DNA from: Octopus sinensis
Taxonomy: Eukaryota
Length of the DNA: 64,000 nt
Direction of reading: 5' to 3'
Assembly: GCF_006345805.1 (NCBI RefSeq)
Contig: NC_043009.1
Coordinates: 67,456,001 to 67,520,000, forward strand
In this document: piece after piece, positions 9,901-63,624 of the stretch
How positions within the stretch are numbered: the stretch's first letter is position 1
Layout: the number at the start of each line of letters is the position of its first letter
The notes under the pieces: model-generated
What the model was told of the DNA's origin: nothing
Database searches by the model: none
What the model saw: only the letters and a program-made list of their open reading frames with translations
Position numbers and translations under genes: made by a program

Positions 9901-10035
9901 CTCTCCCTTTTTCTGGCAAGGATGTAGTCAATCTGGCTGGTGTGTCTGCCAGAACGGTAGGTGACTAGGTGAGAGGAGAGTTTCCTGAAGTTGGTATTGC
10001 AGACCATAAGGTCATTTGCATCGCAGATCTCTGTG
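6901..10035 (-). mobile_element. RTE-clade LINE, 5'-truncated: end of AP endonuclease, RT (YADD), 3' UTR with tandem repeats and (GAT)n tail
   Basis: ORFs 9000-10106 and 7523-9013 contain SQIDYIL, KAPGPSG, MQFGF, GVHQGSVLSPLLF and LLYADD. One frameshift near 9005. The 3' UTR matches many truncated copies in the window. Confidence 0.95.
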
Positions 10036-10827
10036 AAAAAAAAATAGAAGCCCAACTGGTTATGTGATTTAGAAGTTTGGTTTGGTTTGGTTTGTAACAG
10101 GCACATGCCATCAGTAATTACTCAGGGTAGGCATTTGGTGACCTTTATGTAGTAAAACACAGAAAAAGTCAAGTGAAACACATGCGTGCGACTGAGTTGA
10201 AGACAGATTTACTTCTGCCTTTATAGTGCATAAAGAAAATGTTGTTGTAGGAATGTATGCAGCATGTGTACTACAGCAGTCCTATGTGTAGCTTAAATAC
10301 TGAGATTGAAAGGTAGGGGCGAATTATGCCTACTAATCTATACTTGATTCCCAGGGGCGAATTATGCCTACCTAATTGTACTTGATTCCTATTAATTTCC
10401 AGGGGTTAATACAATAATCATTTGTAAATAGGGTCTGTTGTGATCAATAATTATCAACATATCAAGATGAAAGTCTCCAAATTATCAATAGATAACCCCA
10501 GGGTCATGAAGGTTTACAATTCTGACACAGTCTTATCAAAATAATCAAGTCTGGCTTAATTAGGCTCGTTAAGATTGAATGGTCTGACAAGTTCAAGGTA
10601 ATGCGATAATCAAATCTGTCAGGTTCAGAATTATTAATTGTGCAAATTGATTTCTTATGTGGTGGGGGAGGTGGCAAAGGTAGCTGCTGCTGTGGTTGTT
10701 TGTTGTTGTTGTTGTGTTGTTGTTGTTGTTGATGATGAGTTTGTTGTTATAAACCTCAATAAATCTCATCAATTTGTGATAATTGAAATTATGTAATTTG
10801 TCAGAATATAGACCTAAATAGAATGAA

Positions 10828-21296: not shown

Positions 21297-21485
21297 GTGA
21301 TGTCATGGATCCACCCAGAGTCGCAGGCGACCATCACTCGTTCCAGCCAACCTTTGGTCGGAGTCACTGGCAAGCGGAACAAAGAAGATGAACAATACAT
21401 TCAGATGATTATGGATGCCAACGCCCAGTCGCACAAACTGTTCATCATGGATGCTCGACCCAGTGCAAATGCCATGGCCAACAAG
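21297..21485 (+). CDS. MTMR2: MTMR2 exon ([22 protein letters not shown]...[12 protein letters not shown])
   Basis: caacag acceptor, AAG|gtcact donor, 189 bp. Strong myotubularin similarity. Confidence 0.96.
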
Positions 21486-22327
21486 GTCACTGACTCTTCT
21501 TTACACATTCACACTCATTCTAGCCTTATCTCTTTCTCTCTTCCTCTCTTCTCTTTCCTCTTTCTCTTCCCTCTTTCTCTTCTCTTTTCTCTTTCTCTTC
21601 CCTCTTTCTCTTCTCTTTTCTTTTTCTCTCTTTCCTCTTTCTCTCTCCTCTTTTCCTCTTTCTCTTTCCTCTTCTTCTCTCTTCTCTTTTCTCTTTCCCT
21701 CTTCTTCTCTCTTCTCTTTTCTCTTCCCTCTTCCCTTTCTCTCGTTTCTCTTTTATTCCCTCTTTTTGCTTCCCCCCTTGTTGTTGTTGTTATGCTCATT
21801 TACAACTACCAAACAATGTCAAGACAAGGAGACACACACGCACACATAATCTAGCTGTAGAAACCATTCCAAAGCTAACATGTGTAGCCCAGCAGCTTGC
21901 AGGATTTCGGGTAAATCATCCAACCCATGACAGCATGGAAAACTGGTATTAAATGAGATAATGATGATATTTATATGTGTGTATGTATGTATATATATAT
22001 ATATATATTTGAAAAAACGAATAGAGATGGCTTTTGGGGGGATAATTTTTATTTTAATGATAATGTTTACAGTTACTCTAATGAGTTTCAAGCTTTTCGA
22101 TAGCCGTTTTCAAACTGAAATTCTGTGGTTTAGAAGACTGTGTATATAGCAACAGACATTTTTCTTACAAGTATACAAATAAAAAGTAAAAATAGGAAAC
22201 AAAAGATAGAAAAATAAGTAAAGTAATATATTTTATTTTTTATATTGGTTTTTTTTGCCAGATGGCAAAGAAAACTGGGAAAGTAGTTAATGGTCACAAT
22301 AATCCTGTCTTTTATGGTATTTTTCAG

Positions 22328-22419
22328 GCTAAAGGAGGGGGATATGAGAACGAGGATGCTTATCACAATGCTGAGCTGATTTTCTTTGATATTCCTAACA
22401 TCCATGTGATGAGAGAGAG
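22328..22419 (+). CDS. MTMR2: MTMR2 exon ([31 protein letters not shown])
   Basis: tttcag acceptor, AG|gtaaat donor, 92 bp. Contains GGGYE and NIHVMRES motifs. Confidence 0.96.
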
Positions 22420-23570
22420 GTAAATATGACTTGTTTTTTTTTTTTTACTTTCCATACGTGCACCCATATTCACACATTATAACACAGACAGACACACAAG
22501 CCCAATAATACACATATTTGCCCTCCTCCCACTGTCCACTTGCTCCAGATCTTAACACTGTCTTCCAAACATCAACACCTTTTGGATATCTTGCAGAATG
22601 ACACACAATGGTTTTTTTTTACGGTATACAAGTCAAATTTTTTCGATGAAAATTTTCAGCCAAACAGTAGGTCAGTTGACTTATAAATAAACCAAGACAA
22701 TTTTGGAGGACCAAAAAGTCTATGTGAACTACTGTAGGATTTGGAAAGACAACAATAATGTTTGGATGTTTACACATGTATCAGGACAATTACCTTTCTA
22801 GAACAATTCCCCCTGATGACAACTACCCCCCTAGGACAATTATCCCCCTTGGTTAATTACTCCCTCTCTAATATATTAAAAAGTTTTAAATCATCATCTG
22901 TTGTCCTTGAGGTGGGGTGGGGTATTGTCCATGGGGTGGTGAAGTAAATATCCTAGACTCATTTACACATTTACACAATATATACAGTAGTGGCTGTGTG
23001 GTAAGTAGCTTGCTAACCAACCACATGGTTCCGGGTTCAGTCCCACTGCGTGGCATCTTGGGCAAGTGTCTTCTGCTATAGCCCCGGGCCGACCAATGCC
23101 TTGTGAGTGGATTTGGTAGACGGAAACTGAAAGAAGCCTGTTGTATATATGTGTGTGTGTGTGTTTGTGTGTCTGTGTTTGTCCCCCTAGCATTGCTTGA
23201 CAACTGATGCTGGTGTGTTTACGTCCCCGTTACTTAGCGGTTTGGCAAAAGAGACCGATAGAATAAGTACTGGGCTTACAAAAGAATAAGTCCCGGGGTT
23301 GAGTTGCTCAATTAAAAGGCGGTGCTCCAGCATGGCCGCAGTCAAATGACTGAAACAGGTAAAAGAGTAAAAGAGTATATGATATGTTGGCTTGTATGCC
23401 ATAAAATATATTATACCACAATGTCCACAGTACTATGGTCAACCCTCAACATGTTACAGAGGGGCCAGCTGCTTATGTCCGGTCATCACACAACACTCGT
23501 TATTGTAATGTCTACAAAACCGATTGCTTGATTTGAAGATAAACCTTCTGTTTCTCTTTCTTTTTTTCAG

Positions 23571-23664
23571 TTTAAGAAAGTTAAAAGATGTCTGTTTCCC
23601 CAACATCAATGAGACTCATTGGTTGTCCAATATTGAGTCAACACGTTGGCTGGATCACATCAAG
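23571..23664 (+). CDS. MTMR2: MTMR2 exon ([31 protein letters not shown])
   Basis: tttcag acceptor, AAG|gtgagc donor, 94 bp. Completes the split Ser codon from the previous exon. Confidence 0.96.
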
Positions 23665-24787
23665 GTGAGCGAACAAACAGATTCCAAGTTCAAATTTCAC
23701 CATATGTCATTGTAACAATGTTTTTTTTTCTCTTTTAATCTCATGTGGAGGTTCATCATATTACTAATTACCAAAATGAAAAAACTAAGATGTAAGATAG
23801 CAAGTCAAGCAACTTTATGTGGTTCTCTCATGTGGTCTTTGTTTTCTGACAGCAACACCTGAAACGACACAAGTGCGAAATGCTATCAGCCTCAGCCAGT
23901 GGCATGAAGTGTGGAGACTTGCCTGCATTGACCAACTGCTGGTCTCCCTAGAAAAAATTAAAATTTTTGCTCAAGTCTGCACATATATGCACAGTCAACA
24001 TTGACCAATGGAGGTCCTACATAGTCACTCAGAAAGTGATAAATACATAACTTATGTCAGTGAGCCTGTTGTATTTGCTTTATCTCAATTTGGTTCTTAT
24101 AATTATCTGCTATCACCTGGATTTGTTTGTTATCAGTTTGTTAGAGTCTCTCTCCAAGTCTAGCGACTTCTTCTCTGCATGGAGAGGTCATAGCTCCTGT
24201 ACTATAAGACACGTGATTAGAATGTCACAGGAAAGAATTGCAAGACAGATTCTTCAAGAAAAGCTGACAGGCTGGAGACACTTGGGGCAGACCAAGAATC
24301 AGATGGTTGGATAATATTCATTGTCTCAGTTGGTAGAATTTGGGAATCCATCCGGGAAGTGTAAAGATGGTTTCTTCTGATGGAGTCCTGCAGAAAAGGT
24401 GCATGAAGACTCTACCCTGACAAATCCTCTCAGGAAGAGCAGCCAGAAAAGATGGATGAGTGCAGTTTGTCTGTGTCAGCTGGGTTTCTTGGATGCTTTT
24501 CCTTCTGTATTATGAGCTTGTGGTCATACAGAAACAAATTATTATCTGACACATTCAGAAATTGGATGTTAATTTGATTGAAAAAAAACCCAAACAAACA
24601 AAGAATTCATATTGATTATCTGTATAGATTGTTGTGCAGCCTTCTGGCTTGTCACTCATCAGTTCAACTCCTCCAACCCATGCCAGCATGGAAAGCGAAT
24701 GTGAAACGATAATGATAATGATGATGATGATTGTTATTCAAACGATCAAATCCCTGTTATTATTTTTTTCTTCTTCTTGGATTCCAG

Positions 24788-24886
24788 CAAATTTTAGCCG
24801 GCGCTGTTCGTATTGCTGACAAAGTGGAATATTACAAGACGTCTGTGTTGGTTCATTGCAGCGATGGTTGGGACCGAACTGCTCAG
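24788..24886 (+). CDS. MTMR2: MTMR2 catalytic exon ([33 protein letters not shown])
   Basis: ttccag acceptor, CAG|gtaatt donor, 99 bp. Intact CX5R active site HCSDGWDRT. Confidence 0.98.
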
Positions 24887-25075
24887 GTAATTTATAAATA
24901 ATTATTTGTGAATTTATATTTTCAGTTGGTTGTTGTTGTTGTTGTTGTTGTTTTAGTCTAGTCCAGCCCTGACCAAGCAGACTTACAATCAAAGGTTACA
25001 CGGTTGTTCATTTCTGTGATTTCCAGGAATAGTAAAAGACTACGTCATCTAACGTTTTCTTTCAGTGAAGGCGTG

Positions 25076-25390
25076 TGGCTTAGTGGTCAGGGTATCAGGA
25101 TCACGATTTTAAGGTCATGAGTTCAATTCCTGGCAGTTTGTTGTGTCCTTGAGCAAGACACTTTATTTCACATTGCTCCAGTTCACACAACTTGCAGAAA
25201 TGAGTGGGACTTATATTCCAAGGGGCCAACCTTGTAACATTGTGTGTCACTCTGAATCTCCCTGAGAACTACATTAAAGGTACGTGTGTGTGTGGAGTGC
25301 TCAGCCACTTGCAGGTTAATTTCTTGAGGAGTCTGTTCCATTGATCGGATCAACTGGAACCCTCGTCATCATAACCAATGGAGTGCCAGT
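25076..25390 (+). mobile_element. tRNA-headed SINE family C; reverse copy at about 1267-1571
   Basis: TGGCTTAGTGG A box, GAGTTCAATTCC B box and GTCCTTGAGCAAGACACT core. The two copies are clearly homologous. Confidence 0.75.
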
Positions 25391-26028
25391 TAATGCTTTC
25401 TTCCTTTTTTTTTTTTTCTAAGAGATTTGGTTCTTATGTTTAGCTGATCAAGAAATTAATAGAGGTACCTAATGTTGGTGTTGGGAAGCCCCAGTCTTTG
25501 AATCGATCTATAGTAGAGATGACCAGTCAAAGCGAGTCCTAGAACTATGCAAGAGGCAATTATCTCTATATATATAAAAGGCAAAATGTCTGTGTGTGTG
25601 TGTGTGTGTGCGTGCGTGTTCTTTATACAAATCCACAATTTTTCAGTTAGAGGGCTCGCACTTTCTATGGTCATTCAAAGCCGTCCAAGTGTGGTCGTGC
25701 ACATCTTTACATTTCCCCAGTCACCCCACAGAGCCATTAAAAAATCAATAGAAGTGACTTTTTTGTGAATTTTCTATCCAAAACCCAATCAAAATGCCCG
25801 AAACTTGATACGCCAATTGAATGCCAGCTAGCCGTATGTGATTGGTTGGAGATTTTGGACAGTACTCACGTGTATGTGCACACACACGCAGCTGTATATG
25901 CATGCACTAGCACCATGACCCGGCAACGCCAGGTCATAGTGCTAGTGTTGTTTATTTGATTCTTACCATAATGTTTCTAATTGTTTGATATTCCTGAGAT
26001 TTTCAATTTCTCTCTCTCTAATCCACAG

Positions 26029-26136
26029 CTCACCTCTCTTGCAATGATTATGCTGGATCCGTACTACCGAACTGTGAAGGGGTTTGAACTCCTGATAGAA
26101 AAAGAGTGGCTCAGTTTTGGACATAAATTTGCTCAA
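26029..26136 (+). CDS. MTMR2: MTMR2 exon ([36 protein letters not shown])
   Basis: ccacag acceptor, CAA|gtaagt donor, 108 bp. Confidence 0.97.
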
Positions 26137-27352
26137 GTAAGTGGAGACAAGATATTTGGTGACATATATCAAAATTAACTTCTTTACTTTTAATTACCAG
26201 AAAATATTATTGCTGAGAACCATTTTGTTTTGCAGCTGAAGTCTATAATTTTTTTTCTTTTTTTTTTATTGCCCACAAGGGACTAAACATAGAGGGGACA
26301 AACAAGGACAGACTAAGGGATTAAGTTGATTACATCGACCCCAGTGCGTAACTGGTACTTAATTTATTGACCCCGAAAGGATGAAAGGCAAAGTTGACCT
26401 TGGTGGAATTTGAACTCAGAACGTAGAGACAGACGAAATATCAATAAGCATTTCGCCCAGCATGCTAATGTTTCTGCCAGCTCGCCACCTTTGAAGCCTG
26501 TATAATGGTAACCTGAAGTTTGCAGGGAATTTTAAAATTGAATGAAATAGTGAAATATTACTCAGACACGTAGATATTTCTATGAAGAAAGTATCAAGTT
26601 CTTTGAAGAAAATCAGGCCAAAATCTTGAACATTTATGAAGCTGTTTCATTGTATTTAGATCTCCATTTTTACAACTTCCACATCAAGTTCAGATTTATA
26701 TTTGTGTTATTTTATATCAGTCTTGATAGGGAACACCCAGTTAAATGTATTTTATATTCAAACCCAGTATATCTTGGATTACATTATCAATGTGTTCTTT
26801 TCTTTTAACTCAAAAGAAAGTAATTTGGAGCACTTTTAGCTGCTATTTCTTGTATGCTGAGAATCACCATGTATGCGTCCTTGTTGTGTCCTCATTAAGT
26901 ACTGTATAAATGTAGTTGCCTGCGTATAACTTAAAAAAGGTTCGTACATAAAATTATAATCGGGTGTTCTAGTTTGACCATTTAGCAGTTAATCTAGTCT
27001 AAATATTCTGCCTGTTTTATGTTAAAACAGACCATATCCAACTTCTCACACCTACCCAACAATGTCAATCTAAAAATAAACAATCACATCATCAAAATCT
27101 CAAAGACATGAGATAATCCCTGATTAATTCCAAACAATGTGAATAAACTAGGAATACATTCAACAGAGTTACCTGAAAGCTGAAGGGTTAAACACGGCCG
27201 ATTAGAGAATGGCTTGATTTGTGTCATAGAAGCAGGTGGGGTCTTAGATATGTTGTTATGAAACAATTTAGTCTGGTTTAAGATTGAGTTAAAGTTTTAA
27301 TCAAATACACATCGTTGTAGGCTGAATTCCAATTTCAATTTTTTTCTTGCAG

Positions 27353-27445
27353 AGAATCGGGCATGGTGAAGACAAACACTCAGATGCTGACCGTTCTCCT
27401 GTATTTTTGCAGTTTATTGACTGTGTGTGGCAAATGGCCAATCAG
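27353..27445 (+). CDS. MTMR2: MTMR2 exon, SID region ([31 protein letters not shown])
   Basis: ttgcag acceptor, CAG|gtaatt donor, 93 bp. Confidence 0.97.
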
Positions 27446-28632
27446 GTAATTAATCTTAAAATCTGGACAATGGACAGGAGTACAGTAATAAGAACAATAA
27501 TAAATGATTGAAGAACAAATATATGGTGCATGTGTTTATTTGGCAAAAAAACCCAAAAAGAAAAAAAAATATTACCATTCTGAAATATAACAAAATCTTA
27601 AAATCACTGTTCTTTAATTAATGATGTAATACAAAGAACATTAGAGTGAAATGGTTATCGGTAATCACCTTCACTAATTAGGTTTGAGGGTGATTTGATC
27701 ATCATATTGTGACTTAAAGGGATGATAAAATACTGTACAGATTACAAGATTAAATGTATTGAGACTTGGAGAACTGATTAAAACTGATGGACTGGGGTTG
27801 ACTCCTTGTTACCTTTTTTAGTTCTGTGGCAGAAGTGCAGCTCAGCACTGAAGACTAACAAATATAAAACCCATGCTGTAGGTTCCCAAAGTACTTGTCT
27901 ACAGCCAAATAGACTGAGCTTTTATCGGCCCGGGGCTATAGCATAAGACACTTGCCCAAGATGCCACACTGTGGGACTGAACCACTGCGTGGCATCTTGG
28001 GCAAGTGTCTTCTGCTATAGCCCTGGGCCGACCAAAGCCTTGTGAGTGGATTTGGTAGACGGAAACTGAAAGAAGCCTGTCGTATATATGTATATATATG
28101 TATGTGTGTGTGTGTATATGTTTGTGTGCCTGTGTTTGTCCCCCTAGCATTGCTTGACAACCGATGCTGGTGTGTTTACGTCCCCGTCACTTAGCGGTTC
28201 GGCAAAAGAGACCGATAGAATAAGTACTGGGCTTACAAAGAATAAGTCCCGGGGTCGATTTGCTCGACTAAAGGCGGTGCTCCAGCATGGCTGCAGTCAA
28301 ATGACTGAAACAAGTAAAAGAGTATATATATATATATATATGTAGCTGTAGAAACCATGCCAAAGCAGACATTGTATTGATGCTCCAATGTCTGCTTTGG
28401 CATGGTTTCTACAGCTACGTGCCCTTATATATATATATATCATCATCATCATCATCATGGACGCTAAACGATGACGATGATGATGATGATGATATATATA
28501 TATATAAGGGCACGTAGCTGTAGAAACCATGTCAAAGCAGACATTGGAGCATCAATACAGGTGTCAGATCTTTCAGATTCTGTAAAACCATCCAACTCAT
28601 GCCAATAGAGAAGATGGATCTTAACAGATGAA

Positions 28633-28673
<41 letters not shown>

Positions 28674-28955
28674 TTTATTTGTGTGTGTGTCTGTGTGTGT
28701 GTGGTCCTCTGGTCACATGGCTGGTGTAAAGTATCTCTGTAAGCATTCTAGCATCAGGGAATTGATTGTAATGTCTTTATGTAGCACGTAAATAAGCACC
28801 AATTACTCTCATGGAAGGGCATCCGGCCATAGGAACCTTGCTAAACCAAACAGGTTACCGGTTTTCAGCCAAACCATCTAACCCATGCCAGCATGGAAAG
28901 CAGACGTTAAACGACGATGACGACCATTAATGCTTCTTTTTTTGTTTGATTTCAG

Positions 28956-29069
28956 TTTCCAATTGCTTTTGAATTCAACGAATACTTCTTGATTACCATC
29001 ATGGACCATCTGTATTCCTGCCTCTTTGGAACATTCTTGTACAATTCGGAACAACAACGAGTCAAAGAG
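28956..29069 (+). CDS. MTMR2: MTMR2 exon ([38 protein letters not shown])
   Basis: tttcag acceptor, GAG|gtacag donor, 114 bp. Confidence 0.97.
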
Positions 29070-29384
29070 GTACAGCATTCAGTTAGAATTTCTCCCTGAA
29101 CACCTCCCACCCCAACCCCCACCCTCCAACCTATTCCATTAATTTCCCATCTGTTGCTTTCTCGTTTTCTTTATCACTCTCTCATCTAAAACTCCCAGAC
29201 TCTCATCATATCATTCACCACTCTACTCTCGCTCTGTCTGCTTCTTTTGACGATGCCTGAAGCCAGCTCAACCCACCCCGGGTGGATGCTGTCTCAAGTC
29301 AAGTCAAGTCTCTGTTATAAGCGATGGAAAAGCATTCAATCTGTCTGTATTCCATTACTGTTTCTTTATTGCTAGCCATCACTC

Positions 29385-32763: not shown

Positions 32764-32961
32764 GAACCAATCCATCTCCGGAATAACGTTTTGCTGAAGC
32801 TGAAGAACCATTTGCAGAAGGAGTACGAGAGTCTCATGAAGGAACAGGAAAGCAGGAACGCTCGCGGCACCAGCAGCAGCAGCAGCAGCCAGGCTGTCAA
32901 TTCCACAGCCTCAATATCTTCGAGTTCAGCTCAGAGGGTAGCATCTCCCGTCAGCACCTGA
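32764..32961 (+). CDS. MTMR2: MTMR2 last coding exon, coiled coil plus Ser-rich tail ([28 protein letters not shown]...RVASPVST*)
   Basis: ttttag acceptor, TGA at 32959-32961. The 16 exons total 1782 nt (593 aa plus stop) with no internal stop. Confidence 0.92.
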
Positions 32962-33099
32962 GACTAACGAAACGGTCTCCAGAAACGATTTTTAAAGAAT
33001 ATATAGAAAATGCAAAAATAAAACTAAAAATTATGTGTATTGAAGTATAAAAAAAACAAAAAAACAATGCGAGCATGCTTGTGTATATGCTTGTATGAG

Positions 33100-33362
33100 T
33101 GGTGCTTGTGTGTGTGTGTATATATATATATGTATATATATGTGTGTATGTGTGTGTGTGTGAATAAATAAATGCGTATGTGTTTTTACATATATGATTA
33201 TATATATGTATACATACATTGTTACATACGCATACAAGTACACTCTCAGACACATATATGAAACATAAACACTCACATATGTATATATGTATACACATGT
33301 ATGTATGCATGCATGTATATGTATGTACGTATGTGTATGTATATATATATGTGTGTGTATGT

Positions 33363-33397
<35 letters not shown>

Positions 33398-33768
33398 CAT
33401 GTATGTATATATATGTATGTATACATATATGTATGTATATATATGTATGTATACATATATGTATGTATATATATATATGTATGTATACATACATATATGT
33501 ATGTATGTGTGTATATATGTGTATGTATATATATATATATATATATGTGTATACATGTGTATGTATGTAATATGTATATGTATGTATGTATATATATTGT
33601 GTTTATGTATATATATATATGGATGTATATATATATATATATATGTGGGTATGTATGTATGTATGTATGTATATGTATGTATGTATGTATATATATATAT
33701 GTATGTATATATATATATGTATGTATATATATATATATGTATGTATATATATATATATTATATGTATG

Positions 33769-33803
<35 letters not shown>

Positions 33804-34225
33804 TATATACATACATATACATATATATATACATACATATACATATATATACATACATATACATATATGTATATATACATACATACATATATATATACAT
33901 ATACATATATATATACATACATATATGTATATATATACATATATATATATACATACATATATATATATACATACATACATACATATACATACATATACAT
34001 ACATACCCACATATATATATATATATATACATCCATATATATATACATAAACACAATATATATACATACATACATATACATATACATACATACACATGTA
34101 TACACATATATATATATATATACATACACATATATACACACATACATACATATATGTATGTATACATACATATATATATATACATACATATATGTATACA
34201 TACATATATATACATACATATATGT

Positions 34226-34259
<34 letters not shown>

Positions 34260-34678
34260 GTATATGTATATGTATATATATATATGTATATGTATGTATA
34301 TATATATATATATGTATATGTATGTATATGTATGTATATATATATATGTATATGTATGTATATATATATATATGTATATGTATATGTATATGTATGTATG
34401 TATATATATATGTATGTATGTATATATATGTATATGTATATGTGTATATGTATGTATATGTATGTATATATATGTATATGTATATGTGTATATGTATGCA
34501 TATGTATATATATATGTATATGTATGTATATATATGTATATATATGTGTACGTATATATATATATATATATATATACATACATACACATATATATATATA
34601 TACATACGTATGTATATATATATATGTATATATATGTATCTGTATGTATATATCTATATATATATATGTATATATTTG

Positions 34679-34730
<52 letters not shown>

Positions 34731-34834
34731 ATAATGTATGTATATATATATGTGTATGTATGTATGTATATATGTATGTATGTATATATAATATGTATGT
34801 ATATGTATATATATATTATATATATATATGTATG

Positions 34835-34876
<42 letters not shown>

Positions 34877-34980
34877 TGTATGTATGTATAAATATGTGTG
34901 TGTGTATGTATGTATGTATGTATATATATATGTATGTATGTATATGTATATATATGTATATGTGTATATATATTTATGTA
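33100..34980. repeat. Compound (TA)/(TATG)/(TACA) microsatellite containing a long internal inverted repeat
   Basis: Low-complexity sequence with unique marker words mirrored about ~33825. Confidence 0.9.
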
Positions 34981-35821
34981 TGAACTCCACTCTCGTATGA
35001 TTGAAGATCTTTTTTTGTAAATATTGGAAAACAAAAGCCTTAACAAATAACATTGAAATGCTGCAAAAAAACAAAACAAAAACTCGACATCACTTTCTTA
35101 TTTGAGCTACACATATTACTCCCATACACATACGCACATAAACATTTATAGGTCACGCATTTACAGATACACACATGTAAATCTATCTATCTGTCTGTCT
35201 GTCTACACACATATATAATTCACTTAATAGCGGGATGCGAAGCTCAACAAAAATGGCCTTTGTTATGAGATTACAAAACCATGATATTAGTCAGTATTCT
35301 TGTCTATTATAATATAATACTTGTATTTTATTTATTCTCTTTTGTTTTCTCTAAAAAATTCTTCAGTTAAGAATTCTGCCCTTTTTTTTGACTCTGGGAT
35401 ACCCAGCAAGTACGTGGTTTTACCAGTATGCATGTGGAATAAATGTCTGTTGATACTTCAAGTGCATCTTGCTTGCTCTTCTCCTTCATGTGCCCCATGG
35501 CCTGTTAAGGACTTTCTTTCTTCCTTGTAACCCACACCAGAACACAGGGGCAAAGCGAATAAAAATTTTAAACTGCACACAACAAGCAATCTTTCAAACG
35601 CTGCACTGATGCACTTGAAACTCTCTATGAGAGGCTGTGCTTTCTATGTGCCCTGATTGAGCAGGAAGAGCTAAGGTTCATCATATGGGTTATCATTATC
35701 TTAAGTTTGCCTTCATCTATTTAAGAACTCTGTGTGTGTGTGTGTGTGTGTGATTTTGCATACATATGGATACATACAAACATAAAGTTAAAAACTTGGT
35801 AATATCTTATATACACATGTA

Positions 35822-42470: not shown

Positions 42471-44062
42471 TAACCCTCCATAGGGATCTTAGAGGTAACC
42501 ATCATTAAACTGGATTTCCAAACATGACCAGCTGAGACTATATCCAATCATGTAGTTCTGATCTACCCCCAAGTCGCCTGCTAATAGTTTCAGCTTGAAG
42601 AATATGTCTTCCCAGGGACATTCTACTCATTTCCATAGTACTGGAGACGTGGCCTCCCAAAGCAGGTAAGTAGCTGCTTAACCTCCAGATTCTTTGATCT
42701 GAGTTATGCGCCCCTTTTGAGTAATGGAAGGGCCCCATTTCAGTCATATCTTTATCTGTCTGTCTGTCTATCTATCTATCTAATCATATATATATCATCA
42801 CTTAACGTCTGCTTTCCATGCTAGCATGGGTTGGACGATTTGATTTAGAACTGGCAAACCAGATGGCTGCACCCGGCTAAAAGCAACATTGAAGGAAGGT
42901 CACTTCACTACCATTTAATTAATGCATCTTGAGGTAACACGTTGCTGGGATTCATGATAATGGTGGCACTACATGACTTGTTTCAAGCTATCTTCAAAGC
43001 TGAGCTGTTTCACATAATTTATCCTGCAACATGTGAACATTTCTCTTTGACCTAATGGAACTGCATTACTCTAGACCAGCAGTTCTCAGCTAGAGATAGA
43101 GAGAGAGAGAGAGACTGGGAATACTGTATAGATGGTAGATGGCAGACTTTACCAAACTTCCAGATTCCAATGGCAACAATTTTATTAACTCTTCCGTGCA
43201 AAGGGTCCCTGAATAAGGTTTAAGGATGTTGAATGAAACACCCATGTCTCCAGATGTAAATTATTCTGCTCACAGACCTTACCAATCCCACCCCCTTACC
43301 ATATGGCCCTTAGAAGTCCGTATAAAATTTATTTCCAATAAATTGGCTGCACTTATACAATACAAACATTTTTATTCAATCCTAAATAGTATTTAATTAT
43401 AAAAAAATGTATTTTTTAAATGTGATTTGCTAGTCAACATTTTTAGTTATGATAAATTACTGCTGTCACGTTGCATCTGTGTATTCTGGCAGCATTAGAA
43501 CAGTCCACCATATTGGCATTTTTCTTGGTGATTCTTCATCCTTGGTTGTCACTAGTATTTCTTGATATTTATTTCTGAAACAAGACTATTTCCATCTACA
43601 TTATATACCTGCTCAGGACTTTTTCAACTGCTTCCATATCTTCTGAACATTTTTCACCTTACACTGACATATTGAGCTGCAGCCAACCCTCACTGTAAAC
43701 ACTAAATTTTGTCCTTATTCTTTAACAAAATTTTTGGGTATCACCTTCACTTGATATATAAAAACCACTTCAGGACATGATCCTAATTAGAACTTATTTC
43801 TGTCATTTTTGCTTCATGAAAAAAGCAAACAATTTTTTTTCTATTGGAAAGTCATTGCTGTATGAATCCCTGCTGTCAAGTTCAATTTCTACCTTTAAAA
43901 GGACAATGCCTGGGGTCTGATTGTTTATTCTTTCACGCCAAGGCTGGAGCTTTAAGCACATGTTTATAAAAAACACCGCCAAAAAACAAAACCAATTTGG
44001 AATGCCTTCGCTGTGTTTAGATCGATGCAGGATTACTAATGGACAAGTTAAGAGAGGATGAT

Positions 44063-44683
44063 CTAGGAATTAAAAGAGAAGTAACAAAAAGATCAAGAAA
44101 ATAACAGGAAATTGGTTTGTGTGGTTTTTTTTATATTTGTATATTTGTCAATAACGAAAAGGGTGTCGAAATTTAGACGGCTGTTTTTCACCAATTCACT
44201 GTTCATCTTTACTCTACGAACTTTTTTTCATCACAGTAATAGTGGCCGCTGGGTTTGGACATGGACAATGGTGATCACAGCAACCATGACAATTTGGAGC
44301 ATGACAATTTGAGCAAGGATTGCAGGGGCACGGATGACATATTGGTGTCACGTGGATTTGAGGTTCTGGTGCTAAGAATCAAAAGAGAAGCAACAAAAAG
44401 ATCAAGAAAAAATAACAGAAAATTGGTTTGTGTTTTTTTGTGTTATATTTGCATATTTGTCAATAACGAAAAGGGTGTCGAAATTTAGACAGCTGTTTTT
44501 CACCAATTCACTGTTCATCTTTACTCTACGAACCTTTTTTCGTCACAGTAATAGTGGCCGCTGGGTTTGGACATGGACAATGGTGATCACAGCAACCATG
44601 ACAATTTGGAGCATGACAATTTGAGCAAGGATTGCAGGGGCACGAATGGCATATTGGTGTCACGTGGATATGAGGTTCTGGTG
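44063..44683. repeat. Tandem duplication, two ~310-bp units (44063-44371 and 44372-44683)
   Basis: High identity along the whole unit by eye. Confidence 0.95.
44222..44371 (-). CDS. Cys-rich exon-like unit B (xPEPQIHVTPICHPCPCNPCSNCHAPNCHGCCDHHCPCPNPAATITVMKK)
   Basis: Acceptor tcttttgattcttag, phase 1, which fits the donor phase of unit A. All 10 Cys retained. Weaker AAA|gttcgt donor or TAG at 44214. Confidence 0.6.
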
Positions 44684-44687
44684 GATT
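44534..44687 (-). CDS. Cys-rich exon-like unit A (NPPEPHIHVTPICHSCPCNPCSNCHAPNCHGCCDHHCPCPNPAATITVTKK)
   Basis: Strong acceptor ttttttctttttttgttcttttctcag, open frame with 10 Cys, AAG|gttcgt donor (or reads on to TAG at 44526). Not in the ORF track because it has no ATG. Confidence 0.65.
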
Positions 44688-45311
44688 CTGAGAAAAGAAC
44701 AAAAAAAGAAAAAATTAGAAAATTCTCTTATAAGGTTGTCTCAAAAGTTCGTAGAAAGTCTTTGAAAATAATGGTCTTTATTTTGAGGAATAATTTTTGT
44801 TGTTTTTGTTAGTACTTGGCGTGTAAAAATTTAATTTTCGCAAGTGTTTACGAACTTTTGGGACAACCTAATATTAATGAATAATTTGCGCAGCAAAATT
44901 TCGTCATTAAGTAGAAATTAGAAATCAAGTTAAGGGGAATAACTCTCAGATAAGGGAGAGAACCCATAGATATTACGTCACGAAATTTTTTTAAATGTGT
45001 TTTGTAAGTAATTAAGCATCTTCATCCTCTTAACACATTTTCCTCGCTAATATAGTTGGGGAAATATTCAAAACCCGAGCAAGATTATGAATTATACCAA
45101 AGTGATTCAGTAATAATTCAGATTCACGTTTAATCCACACTACACAGCTTCAACAAGCAAATTTGCTATTCAACTGTATTTTTGATAGAAAAAAAAAGAA
45201 GAAATATACAAAGAATGAAAAAACAGTTACCTGGGTAACAGTAATTTTCGTTCGTTTTCTTTTTGGAGCTGCAAAAATAATAAGAATAATTATAATACCC
45301 AGCAAAATAAG

Positions 45312-47872: not shown

Positions 47873-48592
47873 TTAACATATATACAGTGACTCACCTGGC
47901 ACTGTTTGAATGGCAAGTTGTGGAGCACACGGGCAGTGGCATAGTTTCACAGTGGCTGGCTCACACTGTTCTAGATCAGATGTTGATGCGTCATTCATAT
48001 CGACTGTGACATTCTCCGGGCAAGGGCAAGGGCATGGACCGCAAGGCCCGCAAGGCCCACAAGGGCCGCAAGGCCCGCAAGGCCCGCAAGGGCCGCAAGG
48101 CCCGCAAGGCGCGCAACACTCCTTGGGCGCTACTTCAATTGAGTAAGTTTCACATGGTTTCGGTATCAGTTGTGATAACATGGTAGCCACCTTCGTTTGC
48201 TCGGCTGCCACCACAGCCTGTTGGGTCGCAACCACAGCCTGTTTAGCAGCTACTTTTGCTTGGTGTTTGGCTATCATAAATTTACAAGGCAGTTTGTGTA
48301 TGCAGACACAATGGTTGTGACAGTGACCGTGACCGTGGCAGTGACCATGACTGAGGCAGTGACCATGACTGAGGCAGTGACCATGAAAATGACAGTGACC
48401 ATGGCCATGGCAGTGACCGTGTCCGTGGCAATGACCGTGTCCGTGGCAATGACCGTGTCCGTGGCAGTGATGACCGTGCCCATGGCAGTGACCATAACCG
48501 TGACAGTGGCCATGATGCCCATGACAGTGATGATGGCATGGCTTATGGGTATGCATAATAATAGAATCACATGTTACAGAATCACAACTCAT
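47873..48592 (-). CDS. Unrecognised His/Cys-rich protein, 239 aa as unspliced ORF: (GHCHGH)-like x11, four heptads, (CGP)8, CPCP; no signal peptide
   Basis: ATG in AAG-ATG context with an in-frame TGA five codons upstream. Pyrimidine-rich acceptor near 48662. Repeat units vary mainly at synonymous positions. Possible CAG|GTGAGT donor after 47896, so the C-terminus is uncertain. Confidence 0.8.
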
Positions 48593-49652
48593 CTTTCTGC
48601 TAGTTCATGCAAAACGTCAAAATAGATAGATATTTTCTCCTGCAGGTTGACACAAATCTGCTGGTAAAAAAAAAGAAGAAAAAAAAGAAAAGAAAAATGT
48701 TAGAGTACATACAAAAATGTTAAGAGTACATACATTGTATACATACATTGTATACATGCATGTATGCATACACATAGCTTTATGCAAACCAATCACAAAA
48801 ATAAAGTTCTTTTATATACGTCAAAAAAAAAAAATTTAATCTGTGAATGTGTGTGTGCATATATATATATCATCATCATCATCGTTTTAATGTCCGCTTT
48901 CCATGCTGGCATGGGTTGGACGATTTGACCGAGGACTGGCAAGCCAGATGGCTGCACCAGGCTTATATTGTTTTATATATGGTTATGCCTGCACCCAAGT
49001 TGAGGAATGTATATCATGTATTGCGTTTAGTTGAATTGGCATCATCTTCATTGTTGCCTTCGCTTTGTTTTGGCTGTTGTCCGCTCCAGCCTTCTTCAGG
49101 TGCCTTGTGCTAAACTCAGTTCTATCTGAATTTCGAACCTGACCCTTTTTGATCTCCCGGGTTATGTTATTCTCAAGAGAGTTGGAATGAAAGCAGTGAT
49201 CCTTCTGAAGGTCAAATAAAAGATTAGGTTTGAAATTCGTTTACAGCTGAGTTCAACACAAGACACCTGAAGACGGCTGGAGTGTACAAAAGCCAAAACA
49301 GTGAAAAGCAACAAAATGAAGACACCATACATAACACAATTGTGTTTAAAAAGAAATTTAAATGGACAATATTTTGTTTACAAGATTTTTCTTCTGTACA
49401 TGTTTACATTTGCATGTACGCATCATTGTTCTAATGTCGAATTTTTCAAGCTTACATGAGTTAAACAAAATTTGTTGAGGTGGAATACCCTTCCTGTGAA
49501 ACAACTCACTTCAAGTAAAGGGTAAGATTTCTTGAAGAATACACATGCTTTCATGGAAGATTGGAAACAAAAGTACAGTTCAGGTAGAGAGAAAATAGAA
49601 AGATATAGTGCTGTGGGAGAGGATAACGGGGAGAAAGGGAGAGAGAGAGAGA

Positions 49653-49707
<55 letters not shown>

Positions 49708-50454
49708 GGAATTACTGTATAGATGGCAGACTTTACCAAACTTCCAGATTCCAATGGCAACAATTTTATTAACTCTTCCGCTCAAAGGGTCCTGAATAAG
49801 GTTTAAGGATGTTGAATGAAACACCCATGTCTCCAGATGTAAATTATTCTGCTCACAGACCATTCATCCATCCCTTCATGATGAGGATCCAAAGCAAGGG
49901 ACCTTGTCAAGGGCCTCTTCCTGTTTAGCAAATGTTAGATATAAAGGTTGTCTTCAAGTTAGCTACCGCCAACCCCTGCCCGATTAGTTGTCTCCCTTGG
50001 AAACTAGCATCAGTGGTACCGCTTTACCGCTCCCAGGCTCAAAGTTGAACTGCATCTCATTCAGGTTAATTCTGCTTATCTACTCTTAAGACTGTCTGTG
50101 TCTGTGTATGTCTCTCTCTCTCTTTTCTCTCTCTTCTCTCTCTCTTACTGGTGAAGGCCGTTTTATAGGGTTACTTTGGGTTTCTCGCTATAAAGGATAC
50201 CTTTATGGCGTATCTTCAGGCCATGAAACCTGTTGGCATATGATCTCTTTAAAAATGGAGGGGGAAATGATACGGATGTAATCAAGGGGATTATGTGTAT
50301 ATATATAATAGTGAGGGAGCAGAGAGAAGGGGAAGAGGGAAGAAGAAAGAAGAGGGAAGAAGGGAAAGAAGGGAAGAGGAGGGAAAGAGAGTAGGGGTGA
50401 AAAGATGAAGGACTGAAGAGAAGTAGGAGTCGGGGGGATGTTAGATGAAAAGCA

Positions 50455-51127
50455 GGGGGAGATTTGAGACAATATGGCGTAAAAGAGCGAAGAGAAGATT
50501 AATCCCTGTTCACGGCGCAAGCGGGAATCCGGATGACCTCTGTGCAAGGACAATCCGAACACAGACAGGTGTTGCAAGGAGTGACCGGTGGAGCGGAAAT
50601 GGCGTGAGACTGGTATGTCATTGGCAAGGCGGATGTCTCGGAGGTGTTCCGCGAACCGGTCAGCCAAGCGGCGTCCAGTTTGTCCGATGTACAGGAAATG
50701 GCAGAGAGAGCAAGAGACGCAATAGATGATATTGCTGGAGGTGCAGGTGAAGGAGTCGATGATGGGTGAGGAGGGTGGTGTTGGAGAGGTAAGGGCAAGT
50801 GCGGCAACGTGGGCGGGAGCAGAGAAACGAGCCAGGTTGGGAGGTAGGGTCAGGGAAGAAGCTGTGGACCAAGAGGTCTCGTAGGTTATGGGCTCGTTTG
50901 AAGGAGGGGAGGGGTCGGTTAGGGAAGAGGTGTGAAGTGGACGGGTCGGACTGGAGATGCCGGAAAGCTCGAAGAATGGTGCGTTGGAGAGGTAGGGTGG
51001 TGGGGTGGTAAGTGAGGGGAAAAGGGAAGCGGGTGACTGCAGGGCGGGTTCGGGGGAGAGAGCAGATGCACGGAACGTGCTCTGTCAAGGGCGGTGTGGA
51101 TAGTGGTGAGGGGGTATCCACGTAGGA
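50455..51127 (-). mobile_element. Penelope-like element fragment (RT thumb to GIY-YIG endonuclease), frameshifted
   Basis: RGYP, FKRAHNLRDLLV, CSRPRCRTC and ADRFAEHLRDI...VSRHF in overlapping minus-strand frames. Confidence 0.85.
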
Positions 51128-61958: not shown

Positions 61959-63624
61959 CCGCGAGAATTGGGATGCGGGACGAGCGTGTCTGCATACGCG
62001 GACGACGTCACCGTCATAGTGTCTAGCCACGAGCACATCGAGCTGGTCGGCGAGACACTGAAAAACTACGAAGCGGTGACAGGAGCGAAAATCAACCGGG
62101 AAAAGTCAGTGGGCTTGCGACTAGGCACCTGGAGAAGCAAGCCCATGCCGTCCACCAGCGCCTCCGTCGTGGGACGCTGGACCGACGGCCCGGTTGAGTT
62201 GCTCGGGGTCTGGTTTGGTCCGGACCTCCAAGTGGAGAAGAACTGGAACGAGATAACGAGTAGGGTGGTCACTCTCGCCCGGCAATGGGCCGAGAGGAAA
62301 CTGTCCCTAAAAGGTCGAGCGGAGGTGGCGAACACGTACATCGCGTCCGTCATCTACTACCGCCTGACCGTCGTACCTTGTCCCGACCCTACCATCACCA
62401 AACTACAACGCATCCTCTTTCGCTTCTTGTGGAAAGGATGCGTCCCGATGGTCAGGCGATCATTTGCTGTCAACACACCGTTAAAAGGAGGGCTGGGCAT
62501 GCCGTGGTTGATGATGCGCAGACACGCGCTGAGACTGCGACATCTCTGGCTCTATGTAGACGACGGTGAACAGGTGTGGTCGCCGTTTGTGAGGCACGCT
62601 TTCCCGCAGCTCGTCTCCATGACCGAACTGCAGTCGTGGATCAAAAAGAGGCCGAGGAAGGGCGAATGGCACCGCGAGTGTCGCGTTGCTCTCAAGCAAC
62701 TCTGCCGTCCTGGGTCGACCTTAAGTGACTTCAACACAACCAAAGCATTCTATAGGGGTTTAGTGGAGGGGAGGTACGACGACGAGCTCGGGGCGAACCT
62801 GGACGTCGACGAGGAGTACCTGACCCGCCTGTTCGGGACGACTTTCGGGCCAGGGCCCATGGACAACTTCCAGAGATCCCTGGCCTGGGCCCATGGACAA
62901 CTTCCAGAGATCCCTGGCCTGGCAGTGCTACCGAGAAGCGCTACCCGTTCGGGATAAGCTCTACAGACACGGCTCGAGAAACACGGGGCCGACCTGCCCG
63001 AGATGCGGTCAGAGCGACGAAACCGTTCTGCACGCACTCGTTCAGTGTCCAACAATTTCCGACCTGTGGGCTTATGTCGAACAACTGCTGTCACGTGTGG
63101 GACGAGTCGGTTTATCAGCTGAGTCTATCGTCAATATTGTCACGCCTCCTTCCTTCAAACGGGAAGGAAGAGCTATTTTCATCATCCTTGTGGCTATGGC
63201 GAAAGAATGTATCTGGTGGACGCGTCTGAAAGGATTGGAGACAAACACTTTCCTCTCTGGTCAATCTCTCATCAACTTCTTCAAGTACCACTTGAAAAGG
63301 AAAGTGAGAGTAGAGAGGCAAGTTTTGTCTAGCGAATGTTTTAAAAAAAGATGGGTGAATGTAGCAAGAATGGCACGTATGAATGACGAAGCCACCTTGA
63401 GCATAGTCCTATGAACCCAGAAATCGAAAACAGAGAGTTGCTTATTTGCAAAAAAAAAAAAAAAAAAAAAAAAAGAAATATAAAATGTGACTTCATTGAC
63501 CGAGGTTACCGTGGTCTTTTCCGCAGGCTTTTCTTTCCACGGGTAAACCTCACCTGTCCTCCCCTTTACACTTCACATTGACATTTCTGTGATAACGATC
63601 CCTATTGATCTTTTTTTTTCCTCT

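What the first reader, a model, noticed from the sequence alone, without database searches (positions are those of the whole stretch)
44063..44687. Hidden tandem duplication of a 10-Cys exon plus intron, missed by the ORF track
Seen: each ~310-bp unit encodes on the minus strand PEPxIHVTPICHxCPCNPCSNCHAPNCHGCCDHHCPCPNPAATITVxKK after a pyrimidine-rich AG acceptor. The unit A donor (AAG|gttcgt, phase 1) fits the unit B acceptor (phase 1), so the units can splice in frame. All 10 Cys are kept across the five nucleotide differences seen in or just after the exon. The CPC/CNP/CH vocabulary matches the ORF 3.2 kb upstream on the same strand, whose own possible donor is also phase 1 and could join unit B directly. 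Inference: a Cys/His-rich gene or small cluster growing by recent exon duplication, with a metallothionein-like or ODF1-like module.
Basis: partly seen in the sequence, partly recalled or inferred. Interest (0 to 1): 0.76.

Follow-up and report, generated by a model that had tools for sequence, protein, structure and literature searches.

The report
Duplicated cysteine-rich exon, orphan animal gene
A 312-base piece of an animal genome that holds a cysteine/histidine/proline-rich exon and the 160 bases after it has recently been copied in tandem, next to the first exon of a gene with no known relatives; the duplication is real but is an ordinary kind of event, and nothing yet shows that either copy is expressed.

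Summary
Window 44063-44683 is a two-copy tandem repeat of 312 bp, 94-96% identical. On the minus strand each copy carries an open frame with 10 Cys, 6-7 His and 10 Pro in about 50 residues. That composition never arose in 20,000 shuffles.

The 239-codon ORF 3.2 kb upstream on the same strand looks like a true first coding exon. It has an ATG, a perfect CAG|GTGAGT phase-1 donor and GC of 0.53. Variation among its 18-bp (HGHGHC) and 9-bp (CGP) repeats falls mostly on third codon positions (19 of 26).

Copy B joins this exon in frame. Copy A's best acceptor (tctcag|) is out of phase. Only a second AG, 10 nt further on, restores the frame.

The copies are equally diverged in "exon" (5/149) and "intron" (6/157). 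The ratio of protein-changing to silent change is about 1. Keeping all 10 Cys is expected by chance (p about 0.5).

The proposed donors are weak (GTTCGT), and a TAG follows two codons later. The unit may therefore be a last coding exon rather than a cassette exon.

No homologue was found in any library searched, including Pfam metallothionein, keratin-associated and HSP20 models. The resemblance to ODF1 and Drosophila Mst(3)CGP is compositional only.

This is an ordinary tandem exon duplication in an orphan low-complexity gene.

The parts
47896..48592 (-). First coding exon of the gene (232 codons plus 1 base). It runs from an ATG at 48592 to a donor CCAG|GTGAGT after 47896, phase 1. The product is Cys 16%, His 18%, Gly 12% and Pro 9%, with no Arg and no signal peptide.
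   Evidence: ORF 47873-48592 and its sequence. GC is 0.53 against 0.37 in the following intron. Of 26 variants among the repeat units, 19 fall on codon position 3, binomial p=4e-5. AlphaFold2 on the single sequence predicts only a helix at residues 103-142 and leaves the rest disordered.
48317..48515 (-). 18-bp repeat array inside exon 1, about 11 units, encoding HGHGHC and variants.
   Evidence: Tandem Repeats Finder: period 18, 10.9 copies. The repeat finder families D1/D2. Codon table of the units.
48032..48116 (-). 9-bp repeat array inside exon 1 encoding CAP-(CGP)8, followed by CPCPCP.
   Evidence: Tandem Repeats Finder: period 9, 8.7 copies. The repeat finder family D3. Five of six variants among the units are third-position changes.
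44688..44728 (-). T-rich acceptor tract upstream of unit A, ending tctcag|. It resembles the tracts before unit B and before 44062 only loosely.
   Evidence: The alignment scores 42 against a shuffle mean of 21. An unrelated polypyrimidine tract scores 35, so homology is suggestive only.
44534..44687 (-). Unit A exon-like segment (154 nt from tctcag|, phase 0 to 1). An alternative start at 44677 after caccag| gives 144 nt, phase 1 to 1. If it is not spliced, the frame stops at TAG 44528-44526 (...TVTKKGS*).
   Evidence: GC is 0.47.
44372..44533 (-). Unit A downstream segment (162 nt), which is either an intron or 3' UTR-like sequence. It starts GTTCGT and ends with a long pyrimidine tract and ttag|.
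   Evidence: GC is 0.30.
44222..44371 (-). Unit B exon-like segment (150 nt, phase 1 to 1), in frame with the exon 1 donor. If it is not spliced, the frame stops at TAG 44216-44214 (...TVMKKSS*).
   Evidence: GC is 0.46.
44063..44221 (-). Unit B downstream segment (159 nt). It starts GTTCGT after AAA and ends in a pyrimidine tract and cctag|, exactly at the right edge of the repeat.
43803..44062 (-). Candidate last exon. The frame set by a phase-1 junction stays open for 86 codons to TGA at 43803. It is not Cys-rich, and it holds one hydrophobic 19-residue stretch (IPNWFCFLAVFFINMCLKL, mean Kyte-Doolittle hydropathy 1.64).
   Evidence: GC is 0.365, which is intron- or UTR-like. Pfam gives no hit.
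43924..43929 (-). AATAAA 285 nt after unit B's TAG. It would serve as the poly(A) signal if unit B is the last coding exon.
44729..44873 (.). Small element resembling a miniature inverted-repeat transposon, with 25-nt terminal inverted repeats. It sits in the intron and abuts the acceptor tract of unit A.
   Evidence: the repeat finder inverted pair I1: arms 44729-44753 and 44849-44873, 92% complementary.

Best explanation
**What is there.** The window holds a taxon-restricted, protein-coding animal gene on the minus strand, lying between two SINE copies. Its first coding exon (48592-47896) encodes a cytoplasmic, largely disordered protein. That protein is built from HGHGHC repeats, one central helix, (CGP)8 and CPC motifs.

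**The duplication.** A second, Cys/His/Pro-rich exon and the roughly 160 nt after it were copied in tandem recently. The copies differ by about 3.5%. Gene conversion may instead be keeping older copies alike.

**How the copies splice.**
- The downstream copy (B) acquired the pyrimidine tract and AG that ended the duplicated segment. This is a phase-1 acceptor, so exon 1 joins B in frame.
- The upstream copy (A) keeps an older acceptor whose first AG is out of phase. A is therefore skipped, is unproductive, or uses the second AG (caccag|). In that last case the protein carries two 10-Cys modules in series.
- The unit may splice on to 44062 through its weak GTTCGT donor, or it may simply end at the TAG two codons later. 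The sequence does not decide this, and I rate the two roughly equal.

**Function (inferred, not shown).** The dense Cys and His side chains probably bind Zn or Cu and/or form disulfide cross-links in a structural matrix. That is how CGP-repeat sperm-tail proteins, keratin-associated proteins and metallothioneins work. Module number would change by slippage and unequal exchange.
For: **Duplication.**

**Composition beyond chance.** 0 of 20,000 shuffles matched the exon. These are the only Cys-rich frames in 64 kb that are not microsatellite, and all three lie on the same strand within 4.4 kb.

**Exon-like GC steps.** GC is 0.46-0.47 in the unit exons against 0.30-0.31 in the segments after them.

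**No independent start.** Neither unit has an in-frame ATG. They can only be read as exons of an upstream start.

**Exon 1 is coding.** It has an ATG four codons after an in-frame stop, and a donor that matches the consensus at 9 of 9 positions. Variation among its repeats concentrates at codon position 3, 19 of 26, p=4e-5.

**Frame compatibility.** Exon 1 with unit B, and unit A (second AG) with unit B, are in frame. The phase-1 frame after 44062 stays open for 86 codons, about 0.002 by chance at that GC.

**Background.** Tandem exon duplication is found in 7-17% of metazoan genes (PMC3342872). CGP-repeat proteins are sperm-tail components in Drosophila (PMC10645079).
Against: **No expression or splicing evidence.** None is available with these tools.

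**No constraint visible on the copies.** "Exon" and "intron" are equally diverged (5/149 against 6/157). Three changes alter the protein and one is silent. Cys retention has p about 0.49 under neutrality.

**Weak donors.** They match the consensus MAG|GTRAGT at 7 of 9 positions in unit A and 6 of 9 in unit B. A TAG follows two codons later in both.

**Unit A frameshift.** Unit A's best acceptor gives a frameshift with exon 1.

**No homologue to show conservation.**

**Other open frames.** One plus-strand frame has a single stop across the unit, and plus-strand ORFs of 64-81 aa overlap both units. An open frame alone therefore proves little.

**Downstream frame.** Its GC (0.365) is intron-like, and it runs past an AATAAA at 43929.
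Confidence: 0.55

Rival explanations
1. Last-exon version. The Cys-rich unit is the last coding exon. Translation ends at the TAG two codons past "KK" (...KKSS* or ...KKGS*). The 160 nt after it is 3' UTR, and polyadenylation uses the AATAAA at 43929. The duplication copied the coding part of the last exon plus the start of its UTR. Copy A then sits in the intron as a spare, or as a premature-stop decoy.
For: An in-frame TAG lies 6-8 nt after the proposed donor in both copies. The donors are weak: GTTCGT, with T at +3 and C at +4, and A at -1 in unit B. An AATAAA lies 285 nt downstream of unit B's stop. GC falls to 0.30-0.37 after the unit, and the downstream frame has no Cys/His character.
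Against: The right edge of the repeat coincides exactly with a long pyrimidine tract and AG. The phase-1 frame after it is open for 86 codons, about 0.002 by chance.
Confidence: 0.3
2. The units are not expressed coding sequence. They would be a dead exon pair, a pseudo-exon relic of a decayed gene copy, or non-coding DNA whose Cys-rich frame is a leftover. Only the upstream ORF would be functional, if anything is.
For: The ratio of protein-changing to silent change between the copies is about 1, and divergence is equal in "exon" and "intron". No homologue exists anywhere. Unit A is out of phase with exon 1 at its best acceptor. The donors are weak.
Against: The composition is far from chance and matches exon 1 in residue usage: Cys, His and Pro are high and Arg is zero. 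The units show an exon-like GC step. Both frames are intact. A high-quality in-phase acceptor lies before unit B.
Confidence: 0.12
3. Assembly artefact. Two haplotypes, or a mis-resolved repeat, were laid down in tandem, and the real genome has one copy.
For: Nothing positive. The possibility simply cannot be excluded without reads. The surrounding region is rich in repeats (16 SINE copies and many microsatellites).
Against: The copies differ by about 3.5% plus three indels. The junctions are crisp, at 44371/44372 and 44063, inside otherwise unique sequence. Haplotype duplications in assemblies are usually kilobases long, not 312 bp (general knowledge).
Confidence: 0.03

Closest known systems
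Tandem exon duplication in metazoan genes (Letunic 2002; Kondrashov and Koonin 2001; reviewed in PMC3342872)
   Same: There are two adjacent homologous exon-like segments with their flanking intron sequence. Both keep the same open frame, and the downstream copy is phase-symmetric (1-1). The two could be included together or used as alternatives.
   Different: The copies are very young (about 3.5% apart) and show no sign of divergence in function. The upstream copy's main acceptor is out of phase. No transcript evidence exists. The unit may be a terminal exon rather than an internal one.
Drosophila Mst(3)CGP family (Mst84Da-d, Mst87F, Mst98C): sperm-tail proteins built of Cys-Gly-Pro repeats (PMC10645079; PMC12584897)
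   Same: Exon 1 has an uninterrupted CAP-(CGP)8 array followed by CPCPCP. The protein is cytoplasmic, low in complexity, rich in Cys and lacks a signal peptide.
   Different: No sequence homology was detected. The protein also has a large HGHGHC array and a central helix, which that family lacks. The duplicated unit itself has no CGP triplets; it has CPC, CNP, CH and CC. Testis expression is unknown.
Mammalian ODF1/HSPB10 (outer dense fibre protein with C-terminal C-X-P repeats)
   Same: C-X-P repeats (CGP, CNP, CSP, CPC) occur in a protein without a signal peptide. A role in disulfide cross-linking or zinc binding is plausible (own knowledge of ODF1).
   Different: ODF1 is defined by an alpha-crystallin/HSP20 domain. 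No such domain was found here (Pfam).
Metallothioneins
   Same: The unit has a high density of C-x-C, C-x-x-C and CC motifs, and the product is cytoplasmic.
   Different: No metallothionein model matched. Cys is 16-20% rather than about 30%. His is 12-18% and Pro 9-20%, both of which are unusual for metallothioneins. The protein is also much longer, at 280 residues or more.
Keratin-associated proteins and SMCP (Cys/Pro-rich cross-linking matrix proteins)
   Same: The protein is built of short Cys/Pro-rich repeats whose number changes by slippage. Such proteins act as an intracellular structural matrix.
   Different: No Pfam Keratin_B2 or related hit was found. These are vertebrate families and are not expected in an invertebrate-like genome. 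His-rich arrays are absent from them.

Membership tests
Tandem exon duplication | Two adjacent segments that are homologous over the exon and its flanking intron | tested here: met
   Period 312, 2.0 copies, 94-96% identity. Exon core 144/149 identical and intron-like part 151/157 with 3 indels.
Tandem exon duplication | Both copies keep the same open reading frame and have usable, phase-compatible splice sites | tested here: inconclusive
   Both frames are open. Unit B is phase 1-1 with a good acceptor. Unit A's first AG gives phase 0 and a frameshift, and only its second AG is in phase. The donors are weak (GTTCGT).
Tandem exon duplication | Both copies are seen in transcripts, together or as alternatives | not testable with these tools
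   No transcript data are available for this organism. The protein collections hold no product of this locus.
Metallothionein | Match to a metallothionein family model | tested here: not met
   Pfam scan of exon 1, both units and the downstream frame at E<=10 gave no family. PDB sequence search gave none.
Metallothionein | A small protein with about 30% Cys and almost no His or aromatic residues | tested here: not met
   Cys is 16-20%, His 12-18% and Pro 9-20%. Any gene model gives 280 residues or more.
ODF1/HSPB10 | Alpha-crystallin (HSP20) domain | tested here: not met
   No Pfam hit of any kind. Only one helix is predicted, at residues 103-142.
ODF1/HSPB10 | C-terminal Cys-X-Pro repeats | tested here: met
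   CAP-(CGP)8-CPCPCP in exon 1. CPC, CNP and CPCPNP in the units.
Drosophila Mst(3)CGP | A protein dominated by tandem Cys-Gly-Pro repeats | tested here: inconclusive
   An 8-unit CGP array is present. It makes up only about 10% of the protein, and the duplicated unit has no CGP triplet.
Drosophila Mst(3)CGP | Male-germline-specific expression and sperm-tail location | not testable with these tools
   No expression data are available.
Keratin-associated proteins | Match to Keratin_B2 or other high-sulfur keratin-associated protein models | tested here: not met
   No Pfam hit at E<=10.

The most novel reading that the evidence does not exclude
This could be a lineage-specific His/Cys metal-binding and cross-linking protein, possibly of sperm or another hardened structure. 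It would have converged on the CGP-repeat design of the fly Mst(3)CGP and mammalian ODF1 proteins. It would also have been caught in the act of gaining a module. The tandem duplication handed the new exon copy the acceptor of the downstream intron. That made the copy phase-compatible with exon 1, while the old copy's acceptor decays.
Probability: 0.2. Interest if true: 0.45.

Novelty: new member of a known kind. Interest (0 to 1): 0.27.

Why it matters
If transcripts confirm it, this would be a clean, very young example of a low-complexity structural or metal-binding protein adding a module by exon duplication. It would include a swap of splice acceptor between neighbouring introns. It would also add an invertebrate case to the scattered set of Cys-X-Pro repeat proteins.

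In itself it changes no general picture. Tandem exon duplications are common, found in 7-17% of metazoan genes. Orphan Cys-rich repeat genes are frequent in invertebrate genomes.

Tried and rejected
**Homology searches that found nothing.**
- A full spliced model against 5.8 billion proteins gave only low-complexity hits to GP-rich and collagen-like frames.
- The same query with the repeat arrays removed gave no hit.
- The 51-residue unit against 1.84 billion representative proteins gave no hit.
- Pfam, NCBIfam and PDB sequences gave nothing relevant.
- Exact-product look-ups of the two raw ORFs gave nothing.
- DNA pattern scans of the metagenome and prokaryote genome collections gave nothing.
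- Rfam on the whole window gave nothing.
- A literature search for the peptide strings gave nothing.

**Naming the organism.** I tried to do this from the LINE reverse transcriptase. The best relative is only 74% identical. The named hits are a cnidarian, lancelets and a bivalve. The best hit's contig comes from an unnamed metagenome. The species is therefore not established. From memory, the SINE and microsatellite style recalls cephalopod genomes, but I did not test that.

**Ideas rejected.**
- The unit derives from the 3' end of exon 1: no homology beyond composition.
- A decayed third copy lies in the flanks.
- The unit is the high-copy SINE of this genome: the SINE is a different sequence, with 16 copies.
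- The plus-strand ORFs over the units (64-81 aa) are the real genes: no family hit, and no compositional signal.
- The plus-strand (GPQ)n frame opposite the CGP array is a collagen gene: it is a 78-aa ORF, against a 239-aa minus-strand ORF with a start codon, a donor and third-position variation.

Full report

Yes. Tandem Repeats Finder reports one array at 44063-44683 with period 312, 2.0 copies, 94% matches and score 1117. The repeat finder reports a 247-nt pair at 96% identity spaced 312 nt.

A pairwise alignment of the minus strand fixes the strict repeat as [CACCAG...TTAG]. The two copies are 44681-44372 (unit A) and 44371-44063 (unit B). Both outer edges are crisp.

A 35-nt core occurs only twice in the 64 kb, with none expected by chance. 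The flanks hold no decayed third copy.

The window's abundant SINE is a different sequence, with 16 copies.

**2. Is the Cys-rich frame more than chance?**

An open frame of 50-60 codons is not remarkable at this GC. One plus-strand frame has only a single stop across the unit, and plus-strand ORFs of 64-81 aa overlap both units.

The composition is remarkable. 10 Cys in any frame, or an open frame with 26 or more Cys+His+Pro, appeared in 0 of 20,000 shuffles of the 150-nt segment.

A scan of all six frames of the window for 6 or more Cys in 25 residues found only microsatellite frames and three other segments. These are the two units and the ORF at 47873-48592. All three lie on the minus strand within 4.4 kb.

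GC rises to 0.46-0.47 in the two exon-like segments and falls to 0.30-0.31 after them. Neither unit has an in-frame ATG. If they code, they do so as exons of an upstream start.

**3. The upstream ORF is a credible first coding exon.**

- It starts with an ATG (48592) four codons after an in-frame stop.
- It ends at CCAG|GTGAGT after 47896. This matches the general consensus MAG|GTRAGT at 9 of 9 positions and is phase 1.
- Its GC is 0.53, against 0.37 in the 3.2 kb that follow.
- It contains an 18-bp array (HGHGHC and variants) and a 9-bp array, CAP-(CGP)8 then CPCPCP.
- Among the repeat units, 19 of 26 variant bases lie at codon position 3 of this frame. Examples are CAC/CAT, GGA/GGC/GGT/GGG, TGC/TGT and CCT/CCA. 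The binomial p is 4e-5. The counts are not fully independent, but the pattern is what protein-level constraint produces.
- The N-terminus is not hydrophobic, so there is no signal peptide in this exon.
- AlphaFold2 on the single sequence predicts only one helix, residues 103-142, at pLDDT 74-80. Everything else is below 50. That fits a disordered repeat protein but is weak evidence.

**4. How the pieces can join.**

- **Exon 1 to unit B.** Exon 1 (phase 1) joins unit B at ttag|CA (44371, phase 1) in frame.
- **Unit A.** Its first AG after a very good pyrimidine tract is tctcag|AAT (44687). This is phase 0 for the Cys frame. Joined to exon 1 it shifts the frame and stops after 33 codons. A second AG 10 nt on (caccag|AA, 44677) is phase 1 and in frame. 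It is present in both units.
- **Weak donors.** Both donors are weak, with T at +3 and C at +4. Unit B also has A at -1. In both units an in-frame TAG follows two codons later, giving ...KKGS* and ...KKSS*.
- **After the repeat.** After the last AG of the repeat (cctag| at 44063) the phase-1 frame stays open for 86 codons to 43803. That is about 0.002 by chance at this GC. However, that stretch has intron-like GC (0.365), no Cys/His character and no family hit. An AATAAA sits inside it at 43929.

Two readings are therefore about equally good. In the first, the units are internal exons that splice on to 44062. In the second, the unit is the last coding exon, what follows is 3' UTR, and the AATAAA lies 285 nt after unit B's stop.

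**5. Age and selection.**

The exon core differs at 5 of 149 positions with no indel. The following segment differs at 6 of 157 aligned positions with three indels in A- or T-runs.

Three differences change the protein (H/Q, S/P, T/M). One is silent (TGC/TGT). One is the last exon base.

This gives a ratio of protein-changing to silent change near 1, and no contrast between "exon" and "intron". In simulation, four random substitutions leave all 10 Cys intact 49% of the time.

The copies are either young or are kept alike by gene conversion. The data cannot show constraint on either.

**6. Edges of the duplication.**

The pyrimidine tracts before unit B and before 44062 are near-identical to each other, 49 of 53. 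The tract before unit A is only loosely similar. It scores 42 against a shuffle mean of 21, and an unrelated pyrimidine tract scores 35.

The simplest history is that the segment from 4 nt inside the exon to the end of the next pyrimidine tract and AG was copied. Unit B then received that AG as its acceptor. It happens to be in phase with exon 1.

Unit A keeps the older acceptor, which is out of phase with exon 1. The pre-duplication gene must therefore have used the second AG or a further small exon that I did not find.

A 145-bp element resembling a miniature inverted-repeat transposon, with 25-nt terminal inverted repeats, abuts unit A's acceptor tract.

**7. Relatives.**

None were found.

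- A full spliced model against 5.8 billion proteins found only low-complexity matches to GP-rich frames.
- With the arrays removed there were no hits.
- The unit alone against 1.84 billion representatives gave no hits.
- Pfam gave no family for any piece at E<=10. That rules out the metallothionein, keratin-associated and HSP20/ODF1 models as far as sequence can.
- PDB and NCBIfam gave nothing relevant.
- Exon 1 and the unit share no homology with each other beyond composition.

The organism is not in the protein collection. The window's LINE reverse transcriptase finds only relatives at 74% identity or less. The named ones are marine invertebrates.

**8. What it most likely is and does.**

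It is a taxon-restricted gene for a cytoplasmic, mostly disordered protein. The protein is very rich in His and Cys (18% and 16% in exon 1) and carries a CGP array. Its Cys/His/Pro-rich second exon has been duplicated in tandem.

By analogy, I infer that the side chains bind Zn or Cu and/or form disulfide cross-links in a structural matrix. The analogues are:
- CGP-repeat sperm-tail proteins of Drosophila (PMC10645079; PMC12584897);
- ODF1, keratin-associated proteins and metallothioneins (own knowledge).

I also infer that module number drifts by slippage at 9-, 15-, 18- and 312-bp scales. The function is inference only. The gene structure is supported by sequence, not by transcripts.

**9. 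Novelty.**

Tandem exon duplication is common, found in 7-17% of metazoan genes (PMC3342872). Orphan low-complexity Cys-rich genes are also common.

This is a new member of a known kind. It is mildly interesting as a very young case with an apparent acceptor swap. It cannot go further without transcript and read data.

**10. Surroundings.**

- A myotubularin-type phosphatase gene lies on the plus strand, with exons from 21.3 to 29.1 kb. It converges on this gene.
- SINE copies at 42802-43278 and 48887-49861 bracket the gene.

Noticed in passing
window 21300-29100 (+): Exons of a myotubularin-family phosphatase gene. Pfam Myotub-related scores 2.4e-19 at about 21.3-21.5 kb. Other motifs are GGYENE at 22.3 kb, the active site [12 protein letters not shown] at 24.85 kb, DPYYRT...[11 protein letters not shown] at 26.05 kb, [13 protein letters not shown] at 27.4 kb and FEFNEYFL...FGTFL at 29.0 kb. 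The gene is convergent with the Cys/His-rich gene.
   Followed up: partly
window 7523-10106 (-): Two long overlapping ORFs (368 and 496 aa) of a LINE, with a reverse transcriptase domain and a PHD finger. They appear intact. The best database relative is 74% identical. The named relatives are from a cnidarian, lancelets and a bivalve.
   Followed up: partly
window 61968-63414 (+): Tail of a second reverse-transcriptase element, with the end of RVT_1 and a zf-RVT domain.
   Followed up: partly
16 sites across the window, e.g. 2244, 6930, 13843, 19305, 42813, 48898: A high-copy SINE-like repeat with core TTTCCATGCTRGCATGGGTTGGAC has 16 copies in 64 kb. Two of them, in the same orientation (42802-43278 and 48887-49861), bracket the Cys/His-rich gene.
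   Followed up: partly
window 44729-44873: A 145-bp element resembling a miniature inverted-repeat transposon, with 25-nt terminal inverted repeats that are 92% complementary. It lies directly upstream of unit A's acceptor tract.
   Followed up: no
window 32900-35100: A compound TA/CA-type microsatellite block of about 2 kb with GC 0.26. It gives spurious ORFs of up to 593 aa in several frames. Many other CTAT, TG and GA arrays are present (e.g. 54.3-55.6, 57.2-58.7 and 61.4-62.0 kb).
   Followed up: no
window 47910-48146 (+): The plus strand opposite the CGP array reads (GPQ)8. This explains why searches with exon 1 return collagen-like and GP-rich low-complexity hits. It is not a collagen gene.
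   Followed up: yes
window 48655-48700 (-): A long pyrimidine tract followed by ...ttaccag| lies about 70 nt upstream of the ATG of exon 1. The start-codon exon may therefore be preceded by a 5' UTR intron and an upstream non-coding exon.
   Followed up: no
window 50203-51121 (-): Two adjoining ORFs (153 and 154 aa) have Cys-x-x-C and ...RFAEHLRDIR... motifs. From memory these recall the GIY-YIG nuclease end of Penelope-like retroelements. Pfam gave no hit.
   Followed up: partly
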